A DNA stretch of 64,000 nucleotides from Podarcis cretensis (lineage: Eukaryota). The DNA lies in the NCBI GenBank assembly GCA_951804945.1, contig OX638149.1, forward strand, positions 61,876,001 through 61,940,000. Reading direction: 5' to 3'. Position 1 is the first letter of the stretch; the number at the start of each line of letters is the position of its first letter. The position numbers and the translations under genes were made by a program. This document shows positions 10,288 through 63,414 of the stretch, in pieces. A model generated the notes under the pieces. It was not told the DNA's origin and did no database searches. It saw only the letters and a list, made by a program, of their open reading frames with translations.

Positions 10288-10323
<36 letters not shown>

Positions 10324-10353
10324 TGTGTGGTGTGTGTGTGTGTGTGTGTGTGT
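10288..10353. repeat. (TG)n microsatellite
   Basis: Direct inspection. Confidence 0.95.
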
Positions 10354-10416
10354 GAAATATCTATTTAAAAATACACATAATTACAATAAAAACAGCCTGG
10401 GACCAGCCCCTCCATT

Positions 10417-11377: not shown

Positions 11378-11423
<46 letters not shown>
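11378..11423. repeat. (TG)n microsatellite
   Basis: Direct inspection. Confidence 0.95.
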
Positions 11424-11427
<4 letters not shown>

Positions 11428-11849
11428 CTACTGAATTTCAGTCTTAAGGACTTATTTCTTTCACGTTCCACATATTGAGGAATGAAACCTGTCAGTGTAA
11501 AATAGGTCAGCACTTGTTCTGCTGCAAGATAAACCACACTTCAAAGTGAACCAAGCAAACTATTTTCCTCAGGAGGACCAGGCTGAACTTATTGGTACTT
11601 GGAGATAACTTCGTTCTCAGTAAATTTCTGGGGCAGAGACTATTGCTTGTCAAGGCGAATCCGGATTTTAGTGGTCATATAGCTGGTCAAGAAAACTGCA
11701 GGTGAGGTTTGTTTCCAAGGGTTCACCTTGTTTTACAGCAGCGGTGAGCAATCTTTGCCCACCACGGTTGTTGGATTCCATGTCCCATCAGTCCCAGTCA
11801 GCATGCCCAATGGTCAGGGATGTTGGGAGCTGCAGTCCAGTAACACCTA

Positions 11850-16560: not shown

Positions 16561-19370
16561 TAAGCATGTACAATCCTTGATCTTATTAGCATTTAAGCAT
16601 GTTTAATTCTGGTTGGATAATGCCCTAATTGTTTTTGCTTCTGCCTTTTCAGCAGTTCTCTCATATCATCATAAAACTTGAAGGAATCAAAAGACCAGCT
16701 AGTTTTAGAATCCCATTTTCTACTATTCACTCCCAAATGCCATTCAGTCCAGATTAAAGCATGCCAACATCACAGAGCAGGTGTGCTGCCGTACAGTGCC
16801 AAAACAGTGAGCCAAGCCATATGCTAAAGCAGGGGTGGGGAGGAGATTGTGTGGTCCTCCAGGGTGACTTGACTACATCAGCTCTTGATCATGGGCTATG
16901 GGCCTAGGGCTGACAGGAGTTGGAATTGACTGGGACTGACATCAGGAGGGTCAGTTCGCCACCCTTGAGATAAAGTGAAGTTTGTGAGTGTGTGAGTTAT
17001 AGGGTTAGTTTTCACCCTCCCAGTATCTTAAGGCTATTGATCAATGATTCTCCCTGTTTACCTCCACTCCTGAACTATTAGGCCTCCCCCTGCAGTTTTG
17101 CATTTTGAAATCTGAGCTTTCCTTTCCATAACTCCAACATTCATACGATTAGGATTCTTTCCCCCTGCATTTATTTATTTATTTATTTATTTGCTTATCT
17201 GCAAGGACTTGGAGTGGGGGGCAAGGTACCGATGGGAGAGGAGGGGGAGATGCGAGCTGATCCAGGACAAGATCAATTACTATTTTTCATCTTTGACAAA
17301 GTAATTAAGGCTGTAGTGACTTGTTAATTCAATCCGAATGGCTGCTGTGGTGATAGATGCAGATTTACAATCAGTTCTGCTTCAGCGTAGGGAAATGATT
17401 ATCCACTGCAAGCAGGAGGCCTGAGAGCAGGGAATCACTCCAGGGAGACGTGTTTCCTTTTTTAAAGAGACTGCAGGCTGCGCTACAGAGACAGAAAAAA
17501 GCACATATGAAGGGAGGGGTGAGAGAGAGCTGCCCTCATCTTCTCTAACACCCATATTAACACTTACATATACAGTGGGTTGGAAACCATGTATGCAAAG
17601 GATTACTGCGCATACAGCTCTCACAACTGGATCCCTGAAGCCAATATGTGAGATGATGTGTGTGCAGTGCCCAATGCTGGATTGGGGCCATGTGCGCCAT
17701 GCCAGACAGATGGTCAGCGCTATCAGCTTTGACAGGACTTGTTCCTGCATCCTTTCATCCCCTCATCCCAATCACAACCAATAGCACTAGCCTTCTGACT
17801 GGTGAGGCTCAGTGTGCAGAGATACAGCAATTTCCTTATAGAATGAAAGCTTGATCCATTTACTACAGAGAGCAAATCCATATGGCCAATCTGGCAAGTT
17901 GAGGCTTGAGGGCAGATTGAGTTTGTCTGTGCAGCATTCTACCCAAGGGTAAAATGGTGATGTTATTTGCTGCTTCTTGAACACAACACACATTTAAGCT
18001 TTATTCACACTATAAATGTATGTTGGCTTTAGATCACTTAATTGTCATGGCTTCCCCAAAGGAACCCTAGGAATCATCGTATGGAAAGGGTCTGATTAAT
18101 CTGTTCCCATTCTGATTCCCTAGCCCTGCCCCTTTCATGATACAATTCTCAGGACTGTCTTATAGAAGGAGTGATTTTTCAACCAGGATAAGTTCATAAT
18201 ATATATTCTGAATGTTTAACCAGATTTGGGGCAGATTTACTTCAGTAACTATTCACCTGTGCTGTGAGCTGGAAATATTCTGAACTCACGGCAGGTCCAA
18301 CAACCTCAATACCACAGAGAGCATGCAAATCCTTCAGAGATCTACTCAGCCTATATGTCAAGCATGTGAATTTACACTGTGACACGAAGTCATGCAAATC
18401 TACACAAAGTTTGTCAAATACAAACAGCTGTTTCTTAAAATGGCATCAAAGCAGTGCATGATAGCATGGGTGCCTGTTTCCAAATTTTACTTCTTACATA
18501 ATCTCTGTAGAATAAAATAGACCACGGCACCCTGTTTTAAACGCCTTTTGATCAGGCAGCTTTCTATGTACCACACACTTAGGAAAACACAGCAGATTTC
18601 TGTGCAGCCAGTTTGAGGAACATCAGTGACCGAGTGCACCGCATGGGCTGCCTCAAAGATGGAACTTCTCAAAGCTAACTGATGTCAAGGTAGCCCCAAG
18701 GTCAAATTTGTGATGGAATAATAAGAAATGCTTTCATACATTTTTGATGGGAATATCGGAAGTCTCAGGATTTCTGGTGGTTTGTGTATGCTACATGCTC
18801 AAGTATGCTGTGCCAAGAGGCCAACATGGTAACATGGATCCAGCGTTAGCCTTTTAAATCTTTGTTTTGTGGGAGGAATAAGGCCATTTTGTTTGAAACT
18901 TTGACAACTCACCTCCTTGTTGCAGCTCTCATGGAAGTTGCACACTTTGGGGGACGTGACAGGCAGTTTGATAAAGGGAGGTGGTGTGGCAGGATATGGC
19001 AGCTAGCATTGGCTGACAAATTAACACAGCAATGCAAACTGTCTGGGGGTGAAATTGAGTGGGACACTTATTCTGAAGGCTGGATGCGCCTACATTAATT
19101 CTAACCCTAGGGAATCCAGATCCAGCCTGCCTGCCAGCCAGCTCAGTGTTCCTTTTGGACAGACACCTTGGTATAGCTGGGAATTTATGCCCTTGGTCAA
19201 TGTTGTATTGTTTATTCTTTCTGCTTATTTGAAGAAAAAAAATGATGTTTGCTTACATGGTAGTCATGGGTCTTTTCTTCTACAACTGGATGGGATGTGC
19301 ATGTTTGTGATCTTATTCTTACTGTTGAGGTTGCAATTGTTACTGTCTTTCAATTCAAGGGAAAAAAAGG

Positions 19371-20011
19371 CATGGAGATGTTCAGGGTGTCAGGAGAGGA
19401 TATATTGTTTATTAATATCCTTCCTAACTTGCGATAGAGTTTACATCATAAGCAGAGTTTACATTCCCCTTCTCACATACAGCAGAAAGCTGGTTGCAGG
19501 CTCGTTAGAACCTCTTACTATTATGCAGTTTAATCTGCCTCAGATTGAATTGTATATTCCTGGTAAAATCCCCTGTAAAAATCCCTCCTAAAAGAATAAA
19601 GACAACGCCATCTTATTCATAAGCAATAAAAAGAAAGTTTACTCATGATCAGGCAGAGCACAGTGTGATTCTTGTAGGCAGGCTTTAGGCTTAAAGATAC
19701 AAATTTATACTAACAGGTTTATCCCATAAGGGAGATGACCTGGGCGACTGCTTGGCTGGCAGCCAGCAGTTCATTCCAGGAAGTTCGTAGGATGGAAGGA
19801 AAATGGAAAAGAGAGAGAGTGGCAGCATGCCTTGGCCTTTTACCGGGTCTGGAAAGATCATGGCCACCCACTAGTCACATGCAAGGAAGGATGCTGCAGG
19901 CCAGGAGGAACAGGAAGTTTTGACTGGCTGGACCAAACATTCTCTTGCATGTCCACTCTAGGAAAACAAGGAATGTTGTATCTGACTGCTCCCAGTGGAT
20001 TACATCCCACA
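19371..20011. mobile_element. Diverged solo LTR of the same family
   Basis: Collinear with 14488-15138 (caggagaggat.tattg, tcgttagaa, ttcctggtaaa, tgtccactctagg, acatcccaca). Confidence 0.7.
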
Positions 20012-21389
20012 ACAAGAAGGACCCTTTAGTCTGCAACTTATTTTGCCAGGAAACATGTTTCTGATGGAGTGGGGGGACGGGGCTGGCACATGGGCACTCA
20101 TGTGATTGTTTCCAGGGAGGGCAAAGGAAACAAACAAATATAACTAGCATCAACTAACAGATGTGTCATTTATGGGAAATCTGGTGATTCAGTGGTAGAG
20201 AGGCCTGGGTAGATCTGGCCTCTGACAAACTTGCAACCCAGATTCATCCTTCCACTGTTTTGCTGTATATCTGTGGGTAGCCTTAGTATCCAGACAATAT
20301 TTAACACTTATTGCACTTATATCTTTTTTTATTATTCAATGAGTTTAAGATGTTATACTGGAGATGGTTCTCCTCTCCCTCATTTAATCCTCGCAACCTT
20401 GTGACTACTGAAACCCTCAGTCCATTCTCTGGCATCCTTCACTCCCTCCCCCCTTAATTAATTGCAGATATCTGGAATTTTAACATAAAAACAAAAGGTA
20501 GATTCAAAGGAAGGAGTGCTTTCTAACAAGGGTATATGGAAAAACGTCTTCCTGAATGCTGGAGAACTGTATGTTTAACCTTAGGAAGTGTGATGTCTGA
20601 GTTCCATGAATTTCAAGTCTCCAGGTCAAATTCTTACTCTTATTTCAAATATGTTCTCTTAAGTAGGCCTCCCAGTGTGGTTTCCCATCCAGGTATATTA
20701 TCATATTCACCCAGTTTCAGGAAGGCTGCAGCATCAAGGTTCCAATTCTGGGCCCAAATTCTGGGAATTCTAAAGGCACAAAGAAATGAAAAGATTGAAC
20801 ATCAGCCAAATAGACACTGAAGGCAGGGATTGAATTTTTTTTTAAATTTTTTTTTTGCTGCCTCTTTTCTTCTAAGGAGGATCTCTGACCCTCTTCATGT
20901 CATCAAAACAGAAGCAGCGCCCATCTCTTCCAGGAACCTGCCTCCCATGGTGGCCAACTTTCAGCCAGAATTTCTATAAGCAATCTGTACAGGGTTGCCT
21001 TCACAGCACAAAGCCACTGCTGCTTCATTGGCCAACTTCCCATGCTCTTTCTAGCTCCCTGTTAACAAAGAGGAAACAAATACCAGCAGTGTTGGTGCAG
21101 ATCTCCCATAAGTTTATGGAGGGATTTTTTAAAGCGACGTAGATTATGTAGAGGGGTAGTTCACCTGCCCCCCCACTCATTTCCGGGCCAGGACCCTTTC
21201 AAGCTGGCACAGTGATCTATCTAGCCCTGCAATAAAAAAAGAAAACCGTCCATCCCACGAGGGTTAAAAGAAAAATAAAAAGCCCCCCCTCCACCTCTTT
21301 CCCCTTTTTCTTCCTAAGGTCTCAACAAATGAAACTGATTTGTAAAAATGTTACATGGGGGGAAAATACGAGAGAGACATTACACACAC

Positions 21390-24300
21390 TTCTGTGAATC
21401 AAGAAAATCTTTAATAAAACAAAAAAGATGGAAATTGACACTTTGTAGCTGGGACGCAGAGTTTACTAGAAATTGGCCCTCTAGCCGCCGTCTCCCCTTC
21501 TTCCACTTCTACCCGCCTCTACTGCACCAAAGAGCATGTACAGATTGCTCTCTCCTCTTCGAGGCGCAACTGCGGCTGGGGTGCAAGGGGAAAGGCTCCA
21601 GTCCTGGTTTTGCTGCTCCCTTGTGTATCGGATGGGGTCGTGCAGATGTAGACGCCTCCTTCGGTGGTAGCAAAACGGCACGACTTTGACTCGCTTTTGT
21701 TTGCAGGAATTTACGCTGTGCGCTTCAAACTTCAATTGCTTCGGTTTAAATCCGCAGGATTCTGAGTCACTGATGCGCCAGTCCCTAAATCTCTGCTGCT
21801 CCTCCTCCTCCTCCTCTAACTCCCGTTGCGAACAGTCCCGCTCGTGAACTTGACTGGAAAGAGGCAAATCCCAGATAGGCAGCCCTCTTCGTTCTGCAGC
21901 AACGCGGAAACAAAAGGCTCCCTGGACGCAGGAGGCGCTTTGAGCACAGACCAAGCGCTGAGAGTTCCTTCTTGCCGCGGTCTTTGCTCTGAAGCTCCTC
22001 TCTGCAGCGGGCTGGGATGACGCGGGTTCCAGGCCCTCCTCGGCAACGCAGTTGCCCGCCCTTCTTGCCCTCAAAAGGAAGAAAGGTTTAAATAAAGAGG
22101 GAGGGGGGGAGCTGATGAGCAACGGGCAAAGGTTGTGGAGAGTTAAAGAAGGGGAGGGAGCGCTTACCAGGTTTAGCTATTTATAACATCCCTTCAAATC
22201 AAGAAGATCAATGAGTACGAAATTGTTGGCGCCTGATGTGCGCTTTATTAAATATGACGCCAGTAGACGCGCATTGGACCACCTTAGAGAGTGCGGAGAA
22301 AGGGGCTTGGGATACTCCCCGTTAACTCTTCCTCGTGTAGAAAATAATCTGATGAATAATACACTGGATGTCTCCGCACAAATGAAAGCTAATTAGATTA
22401 CATTGGAGACAAAATGAATCTATTTCCATCTACATTTATTTAAGCGCTACAACCATTCCTTGCTTTGGTTCTCTTGTGGAACCAGCGCATTGTAGTTGGG
22501 TGAGTTTGGGCGCTGCGAAGATTAGTTTTGAGAATACTGAGAGAGGGGAGGCTCGGGGGGTATAATTTAACCACTACCGAGATCTTCTTGCATAGGAAAA
22601 CTAGCTCTGTATTATTCTTCAGCCAACTTCTAATGAGGTTAATGGACTTGTTTGACTTCGGTAAAAGTGTGTGAGAGAGGGGCGGGATGAAGCTCTGAAA
22701 AGTTAAATGTTATGAGCTTGGAAAGCACCCTGAAACTCTCTTCCTAGTTCACTTAGTTAATCACCCATTTGCAATTATGTGAGTTTCCACTTCCAATTCA
22801 TCGATGTGGCTAACAAAATTCTGCTGGTGTGTTTTTCACTGAAGATAAAGATGTCCGGTTGTTGTTACTACTTTATTGTTCCACTTTCAAATTTAATAAA
22901 TTAACAGTGCGCTAAAACGGCCAGAAATTTATCAGCAGATTCCTGTAGTTCGAACCCTACCTTATTTATCGAAGTCTCCTGCTCCGGACAGTGAAACTGT
23001 GGCAAACAACACTAGTCCTTTAAGACGGATGGTTTGTCTCTTTTAATTTAGTTCATGTATTTTAAAGGGATTACTCTAATTTGGGGGGGTCTGGGTGACA
23101 CCAAAAGTAAAAAAACAAATCTGTTCTGTAACCCACAGCTGTATCTGCAATTGAATTGAAACCTTGGGCACGATTCAGCTACAGCTTGGTGCTTTTAAAT
23201 GGCGTTGATTTCAATAGGATAGTTAAGCTATCAACAGCGTGACTCTGTCACATCTACTTAGAGGCAAATAACATTGAATTCAATGGGACTTACTCTTGCT
23301 GAAAGCTGAAGTCCTATACACTCTTACCTAGGAGTAAGCCCCACTGAACGCACTTCTGAGTGAGTACAAGACTGCGCTGTAAGAAACACAGTAAGGAAAA
23401 CATTTCAAAGCAAGATGCAAATTATTTTATTTATGTTCTGATAAATACTCCCACCACCACCGGTGTTATATGCGTGCGCGGTACACATCTTTCTTAATTT
23501 TTTTTTAAATCGTATATTTTGATTCACGATTTTTATTTTCTTTTAAGCACACAGCAATGCCTTCGGAAATAAGTCCTACTGTGTTCAGTGCGGTTGAGTC
23601 TCAAGTGTGCCTGACTCCTAAAAAGCCAAGAGAGCTGCCGGCCCAACTTTTTAGTAGCATATCTGATGCTGCAGCACTGAGATAATGTGGGTTAATAGAA
23701 GTTTGCTAATGTCTTCAGTTGGAATCCGTGCTAGACATCTGAAGGGCATCGAACGAAGCAGGATATTGCTTGTATTTTTAAATTGCAAGTGTGCATTTCA
23801 TAATTGTATACACAGAGATACATAAAAGGCGGGTGGAATATTCTTTTCCACAATGTGCACAAGGCCACTATACATACGTACATATATGTTCAAAACTCAC
23901 GCTGATCCTAAATGCGTTTGCTTGAAATAATGCTGCATTGATTTTAAGGGAAATTGTTTCCTCATAAGAGTGACTGGTTAGGATCGCAGCATGTACCCTG
24001 TACTGTCCAGTTTGGGAAGCGTGCAAAAAATATAATCGTGTTCCTTTTACGGCTGCTGTTCTGTAACTAAAGCTTTTACTTACACATCGAAGCTACATGG
24101 GAAACAATGAGCCAGAGCTGCTTAGAGAATCTCGGGAATTCTCTAGGATGCGCAGAGTTGTCCAAAGGGCGCTTCAACTTTGCGCTCGAAGATTGGATCC
24201 AACAGTTCCTCCTTACCTGCTCAACCTCAAGCATTTTTTAAACGCATCAAATATGCTCAGCATGTCTTTTTCTCTTCACCCCACTGCCCTAAAGATGACC

Positions 24301-24730
24301 TCGATGGATATTAACACATTCCTGAGCTGCTTGGGTTGATTTCGTCTGTGTTATGTCTCCAGTTGCGTTTTGTGGACAGAAGCCGGGAGAGGGGAGATTC
24401 CTCCCCTTTCCTGAAGATCTGTTACATTAAATCAAAACGCTGCCGTGGCCAGCCTGCAGCTGAAAGGCAGGGAGAAGAAGGCGCACGGGCTGAAGCGTCT
24501 AAAAAAAAAGTCGAAAGACGTGGTGGAATGGGGTGTGTCCATTGCAGAGGTTCTGGCTTGAAGCGTAAGGAGACGTAGAGCGGTGCTCGCAGGAGGGAGG
24601 CGGAGGCGGGGAGGTCTTTCGCGGCTCGCGTTTGTGCTTTGGGTGCAATAGGACGTGTTCCTCACATGTTCTTTTTCTAATTACCAGCAAGAAAGTTCTG
24701 CTTTCGTTGGGCTTGGCTTATTCAGCATAT
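21390..24730 (-). ncRNA. Putative spliced antisense/divergent transcript (lncRNA or orphan coding gene)
   Basis: Chain of minus-strand splice signals defining exons about 24730-24685, 24498(or 24459)-24217, 22282-22168 and 22069-21390, with ATTAAA at 21415-21410 followed by a GT-rich tract. Predicted from signals only. Confidence 0.45.
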
Positions 24731-24840
24731 CCCCCCGCCCCAATGAGTCACACCGAACACGTAATCCCAACCGCTGCCTGAGTGACAGCGAGCCGGCGCG
24801 CAGGCTTCTTGTTGTCCCTTTAAAATCCGAATCCAAGGGT
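24590..24840. promoter_or_regulatory. Probable SLC6A5 promoter (possibly bidirectional)
   Basis: GC boxes (gggaggcggaggcgggg near 24595, ccccgcccc near 24733), CCAAT near 24740, AP-1 TGAGTCA near 24744 and TATA-like tttaaaa near 24818, all 200-400 nt upstream of the ATG in CpG-rich DNA. The TSS is not directly visible. Confidence 0.6.
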
Positions 24841-25030
24841 AATGATTTATCAAGCTCGTATTATCAAGAAAATGTCATACGAAGGGCACCTTGCTATGCA
24901 CTGACGCAAACCCAGTCTTTCCCACGGAGGTATAGAAAGCTTTGGTCTTGCCGGAGCAAAACCCAGTCTACCCATTTTGCCTGTGCTGCTGTTTTTACCT
25001 CTGCGGGTTCTATCTGATGCTACTTTAGAC

Positions 25031-63414
<38,384 letters not shown>

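What the first reader, a model, noticed from the sequence alone, without database searches (positions are those of the whole stretch)
21390..24730. Hidden spliced antisense gene head-to-head with SLC6A5, with a possible 211-aa orphan protein
Seen on the minus strand, in order: donor CTG|gtaatt (24685); acceptors ttttttttag (exon starts 24498) or ttctccctgcctttcag (24459); donor CAG|gtaagg (24217); an exon 22282-22168 with donor CTG|gtaagc; a 98-nt pyrimidine-rich intron ending cctttcttccttttgag; then a terminal exon from 22069 with ATTAAA (21415-21410) and a GT-rich tract. An ATG at 24263 (gacATG, in-frame stop just upstream) reads MLSIFDAFKKCLRLS and ends in phase 2. Splicing 24217 to 22069 is in frame with the long ORF ending at 21481, giving 211 aa (MLSIFDAFKKCLRLSR-ARRAGNCVAEEG...ELEEEEEEQQ...YHRRRR...GDGG*), with the stop 65 nt before the polyA signal. 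Inference: a divergent lncRNA or young de novo gene sharing the GlyT2 promoter. Caveats: the last acceptor is the rare GAG type, frame agreement has a 1-in-3 chance prior, and GC-rich DNA favours long ORFs.
Basis: partly seen in the sequence, partly recalled or inferred. Interest (0 to 1): 0.85.

Follow-up and report, generated by a model that had tools for sequence, protein, structure and literature searches.

The report
Possible antisense RNA beside GlyT2 promoter
Just upstream of the glycine transporter gene SLC6A5, on the opposite strand, the DNA carries good splicing and poly(A) signals that could make an ordinary non-coding "divergent" RNA, but the proposed 211-residue protein shows no sign of being real, and no RNA data could be obtained to show the transcript exists.

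Summary
SLC6A5 does start head-to-head with the model. Its exon 1 ends ATG|gtaagt at 25033 (+) and joins exon 2 at 26516, giving the 8-residue GlyT2a-type N-terminal extension.

On a crude splice ruler applied to both strands of the window, minus-strand exon 24459-24217 is the strongest acceptor/donor pair. It beats every true SLC6A5 exon. ATTAAA at 21415 is one of only 5 of 202 poly(A) hexamers followed by a (GT)3 tract. A spliced divergent transcript is therefore plausible, at about 0.45.

The protein reading is not supported:
- The stop-free stretch (231 codons, 22176-21484) has no codon-position periodicity (p=0.46, against 2e-6 for SLC6A5 exon 2).
- It has no homologue, no Pfam match and no confident fold (pLDDT 34).
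- Three to five upstream ATGs precede the start codon.
- Including exon 22282-22168 cuts the ORF to 50 aa.

The ORF lies in a CpG-rich, probably unmethylated block, which favours long chance ORFs.

If real, this is an ordinary divergent lncRNA.

The parts
24700..24830 (.). Core of the SLC6A5 promoter, probably shared by both directions. On the + strand it carries a GC box (CCCCGCCCC), a CCAAT, an AP-1-like TGAGTCA and a TATA-like CTTTAAAAT near 24818. CpG observed/expected is about 0.9.
   Evidence: Read directly. CpG profile. No TSS data.
24850..25033 (+). SLC6A5 exon 1 (GlyT2a-type): 5' UTR ending in the start codon, ATG|gtaagt. The 5' end is a guess; the 3' end is firm.
   Evidence: sequence. 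Donor score 6.1. M plus DYASQKE precedes the second Met, an 8-residue extension as described for mouse GLYT2a (PMC6084908).
26516..27022 (+). SLC6A5 exon 2 (N-terminal cytoplasmic domain), with a second, stronger acceptor 19 nt upstream at 26497.
   Evidence: tblastn with P0015. 45 GlyT2 N-terminal homologues. Acceptor and donor scores.
24686..24730 (-). Its existence as a separate exon is doubtful.
   Evidence: Donor score 2.8, at background level. An alternative weak donor, CAT|gtgagg, lies at 24666.
24217..24459 (-). Best candidate exon of the antisense transcript (alternative start 24498). Acceptor ttctccctgcctttcag, donor CAG|gtaagg. Contains the ATG at 24263.
   Evidence: Acceptor 10.9 is one of only 5 sites scoring 10 or more in 128 kb. 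Donor 8.0 ranks 4th. It is the strongest pair in the window.
22168..22282 (-). Optional middle exon, 115 nt. It contains CCAAT, AATAAA (22249) and TATAAATA motifs. Including it cuts the ORF to 50 aa.
   Evidence: Acceptor 7.4, donor 5.7. ORF arithmetic and PAS list.
21392..22069 (-). A better CAG acceptor at 22111 is in the same frame.
   Evidence: Acceptor 22069 scores 2.8 and 22111 scores 6.7. The junctions give 211 aa and 225 aa respectively.
21484..22176 (-). Stop-free stretch of 231 codons. It has no ATG until codon 207 of the 231 and is best read as a chance ORF in CpG-rich DNA.
   Evidence: length and shuffles; no periodicity; no homologue; no Pfam; pLDDT 34.
21381..21415 (-). Well-formed poly(A) site: ATTAAA, CA 13-18 nt downstream, then a gtgtgtgta tract.
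   Evidence: Only 5 of 202 AATAAA/ATTAAA hexamers in the window have a (GT)3 tract downstream.
21400..22600 (.). Upstream CpG-rich block (CpG o/e 0.64-0.89, GC up to 0.56). It is the left edge of a roughly 10-kb CpG-undepleted domain running to about 32000. Immediately upstream, o/e is 0.06-0.3.

Best explanation
This is most likely a divergent, non-coding transcript made from the SLC6A5 (GlyT2) promoter region on the minus strand.

Inferred mechanism: RNA polymerase II initiates in both directions from the GC-box/CCAAT core at about 24700-24830. In the antisense direction it meets no poly(A) hexamer for about 1.2 kb. It does meet a very strong 5' splice site at 24217, preceded by a very strong acceptor at 24459. 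That combination favours a spliced, elongated RNA over an early-terminated one. The RNA would then splice to one of several downstream acceptors and end at a poly(A) site, the best-formed being ATTAAA at 21415.

The 211-aa ORF is a by-product of CpG-rich DNA and is not translated into a functional protein.

Shown here: the motifs, their relative strength, the head-to-head geometry and the lack of coding signature. Inferred only: that the RNA exists, where it starts, and which junctions it uses.
For: - SLC6A5 exon 1 ends at 25033 (+) and exon 2 starts at 26516, so the candidate exons lie directly upstream on the other strand.
- Exon 24459-24217 is the strongest acceptor/donor pair on either strand of the 64-kb window. 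It is stronger than all ten mapped SLC6A5 exons.
- Its donor ranks 4th of all GT sites, and its acceptor is one of 5 sites scoring 10 or more in 128 kb.
- Minus-strand donors scoring 5 or more number 4 in this 3.4-kb block. That is the maximum seen in any block, and only 2 of 72 block-strands reach it.
- The + strand has only weak donors here (best 4.4) upstream of SLC6A5's own exon 1 donor at 25033.
- The first minus-strand poly(A) hexamer is at 23537. The ATTAAA at 21415 is among the 5 of 202 hexamers with a (GT)3 downstream element.
- Bidirectional initiation at vertebrate promoters is the rule (abstract of PMC11230626).
- Non-coding reading: no codon periodicity (chi2 5.7, p=0.46, against p=1.8e-6 for SLC6A5 exon 2 and 1.7e-4 for a LINE ORF), no homologue, no Pfam, pLDDT 34, and 3-5 upstream ATGs.
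Against:
- The splice ruler is a crude PWM built from remembered consensus frequencies, and it gives decoys. An equally good pair sits at 41119-41265 (+) inside a LINE. Two of the five best acceptors sit in an intronic CpG island, so CpG-rich DNA throws up acceptor-like tracts by chance.
- The donor of the supposed first exon (24685) is weak, so the upstream partner of the strong 24459 acceptor is unclear.
- Most antisense promoter transcripts are short and unstable.
- To my knowledge (unchecked here) no SLC6A5 antisense lncRNA is named in mammals, and a paper search found none.
Confidence: 0.45

Rival explanations
1. There is no stable spliced transcript. The motifs are chance matches inside a CpG-rich, probably unmethylated regulatory domain upstream of SLC6A5 (promoter flank or enhancer). 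At most a short, unstable upstream-antisense RNA is made.
For: - CpG o/e jumps from 0.06-0.3 to 0.6-0.9 at about 21300 and stays high to about 32000. The whole interval looks like a methylation-free regulatory domain, not a gene body.
- Decoy exon-like pairs and acceptors occur elsewhere in the window.
- Donor 24685 and acceptor 22069 are at background level.
- Seven further poly(A) hexamers lie between 23537 and 22249 on the minus strand.
- Antisense promoter transcription usually terminates quickly (PMC11230626).
Against: The best exon-like pair of the entire window falls in the 3.4 kb where a divergent transcript would be expected. That is roughly a 3% coincidence for one decoy placed at random in 128 kb. 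No poly(A) hexamer lies before the strong donor.
Confidence: 0.35
2. One reading: a young de novo gene whose mRNA (24263 ATG, junction 24217 to 22069 or 22111) is translated into a 211- or 225-residue orphan protein.
For: - The ORF arithmetic is right, and a second, better acceptor (22111, CAG type) keeps the same frame.
- The stop-free stretch is the third longest in the window and is reached by only 0.35-0.6% of local shuffles.
- The stop lies in the last exon, 65 nt before a good poly(A) signal.
Against: - No codon-position periodicity, as in the chance ORFs of the window.
- No homologue among 5.8 billion protein clusters and no Pfam family.
- Single-sequence AlphaFold gives pLDDT 34.
- Three to five upstream ATGs precede the start codon.
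- The long exon has no ATG of its own until codon 207 of the 231-codon stretch.
Confidence: 0.03
3. The CpG-rich block 21400-22600 is an alternative upstream promoter or first exon of SLC6A5 itself, on the + strand. It would be the counterpart of the non-coding alternative first exons of mouse GLYT2b/c and would splice to the 26497 or 26516 acceptor. This does not exclude an antisense RNA.
For: - Mouse GLYT2 has three 5' variants from alternative first exons (PMC6084908).
- The block is CpG-rich like a promoter.
- It holds a TATA-like palindromic TATTTATA/TATAAATA (22183-22190), a CCAAT and a CRE-like TGACGCCA (read).
- A + strand donor TGG|gtgagt at 22499 scores 4.4, within the range of true SLC6A5 donors.
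- Exon 2 has two tandem acceptors.
Against: No + strand donor scoring 5 or more lies anywhere in 21300-24800. There is no transcript evidence. The position of the mouse alternative exons relative to exon 1a was not checked.
Confidence: 0.1
4. The strong 24459-24217 exon is an internal exon of a longer natural antisense transcript. That transcript would start inside SLC6A5, for example at the intronic CpG island at 28000-31000, and splice over SLC6A5 exons 1-2, rather than starting at the shared promoter.
For: - An internal-type acceptor as strong as 24459 needs an upstream donor, and the local ones are weak (24685 at 2.8, 24666 at 3.8).
- Strong minus-strand donors lie further upstream at 27498 (CAG|gtaagc, 7.7) and 31325 (7.3).
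- The interval 30000-31000 has GC 0.60 and CpG o/e about 0.8.
Against: This rests on motifs only, and such donors occur by chance at about 0.06-0.1 per kb per strand.
Confidence: 0.07

Closest known systems
Divergent (bidirectional-promoter) long non-coding RNAs of vertebrate protein-coding genes
   Same: Opposite strand. The candidate exons begin a few hundred nt from the coding gene's first exon. The promoter core is CpG-rich. A strong 5' splice site lies early in the antisense direction, with no poly(A) hexamer before it. A canonical poly(A) site follows a few kb on. There is no coding signature.
   Different: No transcript has been shown here. The supposed first-exon donor is weak. To my knowledge no such partner is named for SLC6A5 in mammals, and a paper search found none.
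Upstream antisense RNAs / PROMPTs (short, unstable promoter by-products; background in PMC11230626)
   Same: Same origin, by bidirectional initiation at a promoter.
   Different: PROMPT regions are, from general knowledge (the U1-PAS axis; I did not read the primary paper here), poor in 5' splice sites and rich in early poly(A) signals. Here the first 1.2 kb has a top-ranking 5' splice site and no AATAAA/ATTAAA.
De novo (orphan) protein-coding genes arising from non-coding or promoter-associated transcripts
   Same: A long ORF with no homologues, in a putative young transcript. It is predicted to be disordered and lies in GC-rich DNA.
   Different: None of the tests that could be run supports coding (periodicity, start-codon context with upstream ATGs, robustness to alternative junctions). 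Translation and lineage comparisons were not possible.
Alternative 5' exons of the GlyT2 gene (mouse GLYT2a/b/c; Ebihara et al. 2004 as cited in PMC6084908)
   Same: The lizard gene has the GLYT2a arrangement: an ATG at the very end of exon 1 and an 8-residue extension before the exon-2 Met.
   Different: The candidate exons are on the opposite strand, so they cannot be such exons. Only the CpG-rich block at 21400-22600 might host one, on the + strand.

Membership tests
Divergent promoter-associated lncRNA | Transcription start on the opposite strand within about 1-2 kb of a protein-coding gene's start | tested here: inconclusive
   The geometry fits. SLC6A5 exon 1 ends at 25033 (+), and the candidate minus-strand exons start at or below 24730. 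No TSS data were available.
Divergent promoter-associated lncRNA | An RNA is actually made (RNA-seq, CAGE, cDNA) | not testable with these tools
Divergent promoter-associated lncRNA | Splice and poly(A) signals able to give a stable processed RNA | tested here: met
   Exon 24459-24217 is the best acceptor/donor pair in the window. ATTAAA, CA and a (GT)n tract lie at 21415-21381. This is at motif level only.
Divergent promoter-associated lncRNA | No protein-coding potential | tested here: met
   No codon periodicity, no homologue, no Pfam, pLDDT 34, upstream ATGs present.
De novo / orphan protein-coding gene | An ATG-initiated ORF that survives the transcript's actual splicing | tested here: inconclusive
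   211 or 225 aa arise only with junctions 24217 to 22069 or 22111. Eight other plausible acceptors give 29-139 aa. Which junctions are used is unknown.
De novo / orphan protein-coding gene | Coding signature in the sequence (codon-position bias) | tested here: not met
   Chi2 5.7, p=0.46, the same as chance ORFs. True coding controls give p=1.8e-6 and 1.7e-4.
De novo / orphan protein-coding gene | ORF kept open under purifying selection in close relatives, and non-coding in outgroups | not testable with these tools
   No homologue was found. The database also holds no close relative of this species: the best GlyT2 exon-2 match is 76% identical. Contig retrieval was closed.
De novo / orphan protein-coding gene | Evidence of translation (Ribo-seq, peptides) | not testable with these tools
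   No such data were accessible.
PROMPT / upstream antisense RNA | Early poly(A) signals and few 5' splice sites in the antisense direction, giving a short unstable RNA | tested here: not met
   The first AATAAA/ATTAAA on the minus strand is at 23537, about 1.2 kb from the promoter core. A top-ranking 5' splice site at 24217 comes first. RNA stability itself was not tested.
SLC6A5 alternative first exon (+ strand) | A + strand exon with a usable donor upstream of exon 2 | tested here: inconclusive
   Only weak + strand donors lie in 21300-24800, the best being 22499 at 4.4. Some true SLC6A5 donors score as low.

The most novel reading that the evidence does not exclude
A lineage-restricted de novo protein of 211-225 residues is translated from a spliced divergent transcript of the GlyT2 promoter. 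This would be a protein-coding gene born from promoter-associated antisense transcription in CpG-rich DNA.
Probability: 0.03. Interest if true: 0.5.

Novelty: new member of a known kind. Interest (0 to 1): 0.15.

Why it matters
If the transcript is real, it adds one more divergent lncRNA to a very large class. It might be of local interest for how the glycinergic-neuron marker gene SLC6A5 is regulated, because divergent lncRNAs sometimes modulate their coding neighbour. It would not change any general view. The orphan-protein reading would be more interesting as a case of de novo gene birth, but nothing found here supports it. The practical value of this check is negative: a long ORF in CpG-rich promoter-flanking DNA, joined in frame through hand-picked splice motifs, is not evidence for a protein.

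Tried and rejected
- **Orthologous loci.** No comparison of the upstream region in other squamates was possible. I did not scan metagenome contigs for GlyT2 because the conserved part of exon 2 could pull in human-derived contigs, and the expected gain was small.
- **Homology of the long ORF.** There were no hits at E<=0.01, no Pfam and no confident structure. I made no fold search because the model is too poor to search with.
- **Known RNA families.** Rfam at gathering thresholds found nothing in 18000-32000.
- **Repeats.** There is no repeat family or transposon copy explaining 21400-22300 or 24200-24700.
- **Upstream neighbour.** A motif search for a PRMT-type methyltransferase (a remembered THW loop and others) found nothing convincing in the window. 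The gene upstream of 21000 stays unidentified.
- **GC skew.** It gave no consistent strand signal over 25200-21200.
- **Literature.** No paper linking SLC6A5 to an antisense or divergent lncRNA was found.
- **Earlier notes of this scan.** Nothing bears on this place.
- **The joined protein.** The joined (spliced) protein was not sent to any search or folding tool. Exon pieces were sent by reference only. Joined coordinates were used only inside local scripts to count ATGs and ORF lengths.
Full report
**What is there**

I read the minus strand of 21300-24800. Every element in the finding is at the stated coordinate:
- Donor CTG|gtaatt after 24685.
- Acceptors ending at 24499 and 24460, so exon starts at 24498 and 24459.
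- Donor CAG|gtaagg after 24217.
- A 115-nt exon-like piece at 22282-22168 with donor CTG|gtaagc.
- A 98-nt pyrimidine-rich interval ending ttttgag.
- A long G+C-rich stretch from 22069.
- ATTAAA at 21415-21410, followed by CA and a gtgtgtgta tract.

The ATG at 24263 has an in-frame TGA 15 nt upstream, reads MLSIFDAFKKCLRLS and ends in phase 2. Local arithmetic on the coordinates gives 211 aa for the junction 24217 to 22069.

**Context**

SLC6A5 lies on the + strand. A tblastn of a full-length GlyT2 representative (P0015) maps exons 2 to 11 between 26513 and 63363. Pfam SNF matches confirm two of them.

Upstream of exon 2, the + strand reads ...ctactttagacATG|gtaagt at 25033. Joined to the acceptor at 26516, this gives [12 protein letters not shown]..., an eight-residue extension in front of the exon-2 methionine. 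That is the arrangement described for mouse GLYT2a, where the ATG sits in exon 1a and the protein is eight residues longer than GLYT2b/c (PMC6084908).

The core between the two units (about 24700-24830) carries a GC box, a CCAAT, an AP-1-like site and a TATA-like element. Its CpG observed/expected is about 0.9.

**Are the splice signals more than chance?**

I built a crude ruler: a donor PWM from remembered consensus frequencies, and an acceptor score from pyrimidine content. I applied it equally to both strands of the whole window. It is only a relative measure.

| Site (minus strand) | Score | How it ranks |
|---|---|---|
| Donor 24217 | 8.0 | 4th of all GT sites in 128 kb |
| Acceptor 24459 | 10.9 | one of 5 sites scoring 10 or more |
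| Donor 24685 | 2.8 | background |
| Acceptor 22069 (GAG) | 2.8 | background |

- The pair 24459-24217 is the strongest exon-like pair in the window. It beats all ten true SLC6A5 exons.
- This 3.4-kb block holds four minus-strand donors scoring 5 or more. That is the maximum of any block, and only 2 of 72 block-strands reach it. Upstream of SLC6A5's own exon 1 donor at 25033, the + strand has none.
- There are many better acceptors between 24217 and the poly(A) site: 23738, 23376, 23090, 22536, 22282 and 22111.
- The ruler also yields decoys. An equally strong pair sits inside a LINE, and two of the five best acceptors sit in an intronic CpG island.

I read this as real but moderate support for one exon.

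**Poly(A) signals**

The window has 202 AATAAA/ATTAAA hexamers, and only 5 have a (GT)3 tract downstream. The one at 21415 is among them.

On the minus strand, the first hexamer after the promoter core is at 23537. A strong 5' splice site therefore comes before any poly(A) hexamer. From general knowledge of promoter directionality, that order favours a stable, elongated antisense RNA over a PROMPT-like one. Background on bidirectional initiation is in PMC11230626.

**Is the ORF a gene?**

The stop-free stretch runs 22176-21484 (231 codons). It is the third longest in the window, after a LINE ORF and the stretch holding SLC6A5 exon 2. A run of 213 or more codons arises in 0.35-0.6% of dinucleotide-preserving shuffles of the local 771 nt. 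That is unusual locally but expected many times over in a vertebrate genome.

Against coding:
- Nucleotide use does not depend on codon position (chi2 5.7, p=0.46), just as in seven chance ORFs of the window. SLC6A5 exon 2 gives p=1.8e-6 and the LINE ORF gives 1.7e-4.
- No protein among 5.8 billion clusters resembles it.
- It matches no Pfam family.
- A single-sequence AlphaFold model has mean pLDDT 34.
- Of ten plausible acceptors, only 22069 and 22111 keep the long frame, giving 211 and 225 aa.

One caveat applies to the homology blank. The database contains no close relative of this species. The best match to the GlyT2 exon-2 peptide is only 76% identical. The blank therefore says nothing about sister species.

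**Why a long ORF here?**

CpG observed/expected rises abruptly from 0.06-0.3 (19000-21200) to 0.6-0.9 at about 21300-21400, and it stays high to about 32000. The candidate terminal exon is thus the left edge of a roughly 10-kb CpG-undepleted domain around the SLC6A5 5' end. Such a domain is presumably unmethylated in the germ line. DNA like this is G+C-rich and poor in stop codons.

The block could equally be a regulatory element or an alternative + strand promoter. It holds TATA-like, CCAAT and CRE-like motifs at 22183-22280 and a weak + strand donor at 22499.

**What could not be done**

As the message instructed, I went on with other tools. No letters of it were sent to DNA-pattern, genome, paper or findings searches.

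The joined spliced protein was never sent to a search or fold tool. The exon pieces were sent by reference, and the joining was done only as coordinate arithmetic in local scripts.

**Verdict**

| Reading | Probability |
|---|---|
| Ordinary divergent, spliced, polyadenylated non-coding RNA sharing the SLC6A5 promoter region, with exon 24459-24217 its most credible part and an uncertain 3' structure | about 0.45 |
| Nothing stable is made; the motifs are chance matches in a CpG-rich regulatory domain | about 0.35 |
| Alternative + strand SLC6A5 first exon in the 21400-22600 block | about 0.1 |
| Longer overlapping antisense RNA fed from donors at 27498 or 31325 | about 0.07 |
| Orphan protein | about 0.03 |

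Interest is low. If real, this is a new member of a very common class.

Noticed in passing
window 26497 and 26516 (+): SLC6A5 exon 2 has two tandem acceptors 19 nt apart: ttttcag|TGT at 26497 (score 9.9) and ctttcag|GAT at 26516 (6.7). Only 26516 keeps the exon-1 ATG in frame (GlyT2a-type, +8 residues). Use of 26497 would shift the frame and leave the exon-2 Met (MSKQ...) as the start, a possible route to a GlyT2b-like protein from the same first exon.
   Followed up: partly
window 28000-31000: There is an intronic CpG island between SLC6A5 exons 2 and 3 (GC up to 0.63, CpG o/e 0.7-0.9). It holds two of the five strongest acceptor-like sites in the window (30167 and 30475, +), minus-strand donors at 31325 and 27498, and chance-looking ORFs of 150-165 codons on the minus strand. 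It could be an alternative promoter or a regulatory island.
   Followed up: no
window 40834-41646 (-): The longest ORF of the window (258-270 codons) looks like the C-terminal part of a CR1-type LINE reverse transcriptase. The Pfam RVT_1 match is only weak (E=0.1), so the family name rests on my memory of the sequence type. It lies in the SLC6A5 intron between the exons at 37206-37379 and 47835-47976. On its opposite (+, SLC6A5-sense) strand sits a strong exon-like pair at 41119-41265.
   Followed up: partly
window 19000-21400: There is a sharp boundary in CpG depletion. Observed/expected is 0.06-0.3 up to about 21200, then 0.5-0.9 from about 21300 onward. This coincides with the candidate poly(A) site at 21415.
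   Followed up: partly
window about 23290-23370 (-): A stretch reading ...ggggcttactcctaggtaagagtgtataggacttcagc... resembles the core of a common squamate SINE (from memory, not tested). It supplies one of the minus-strand donor-like sites (23328).
   Followed up: no
A separate short TATA-driven unit from about 22155 to 21393 cannot be excluded.
   Followed up: no
window about 10300-10400 and 11390-11430 (+): (GT)n microsatellites are visible as CVCVCV runs in ORF translations.
   Followed up: no
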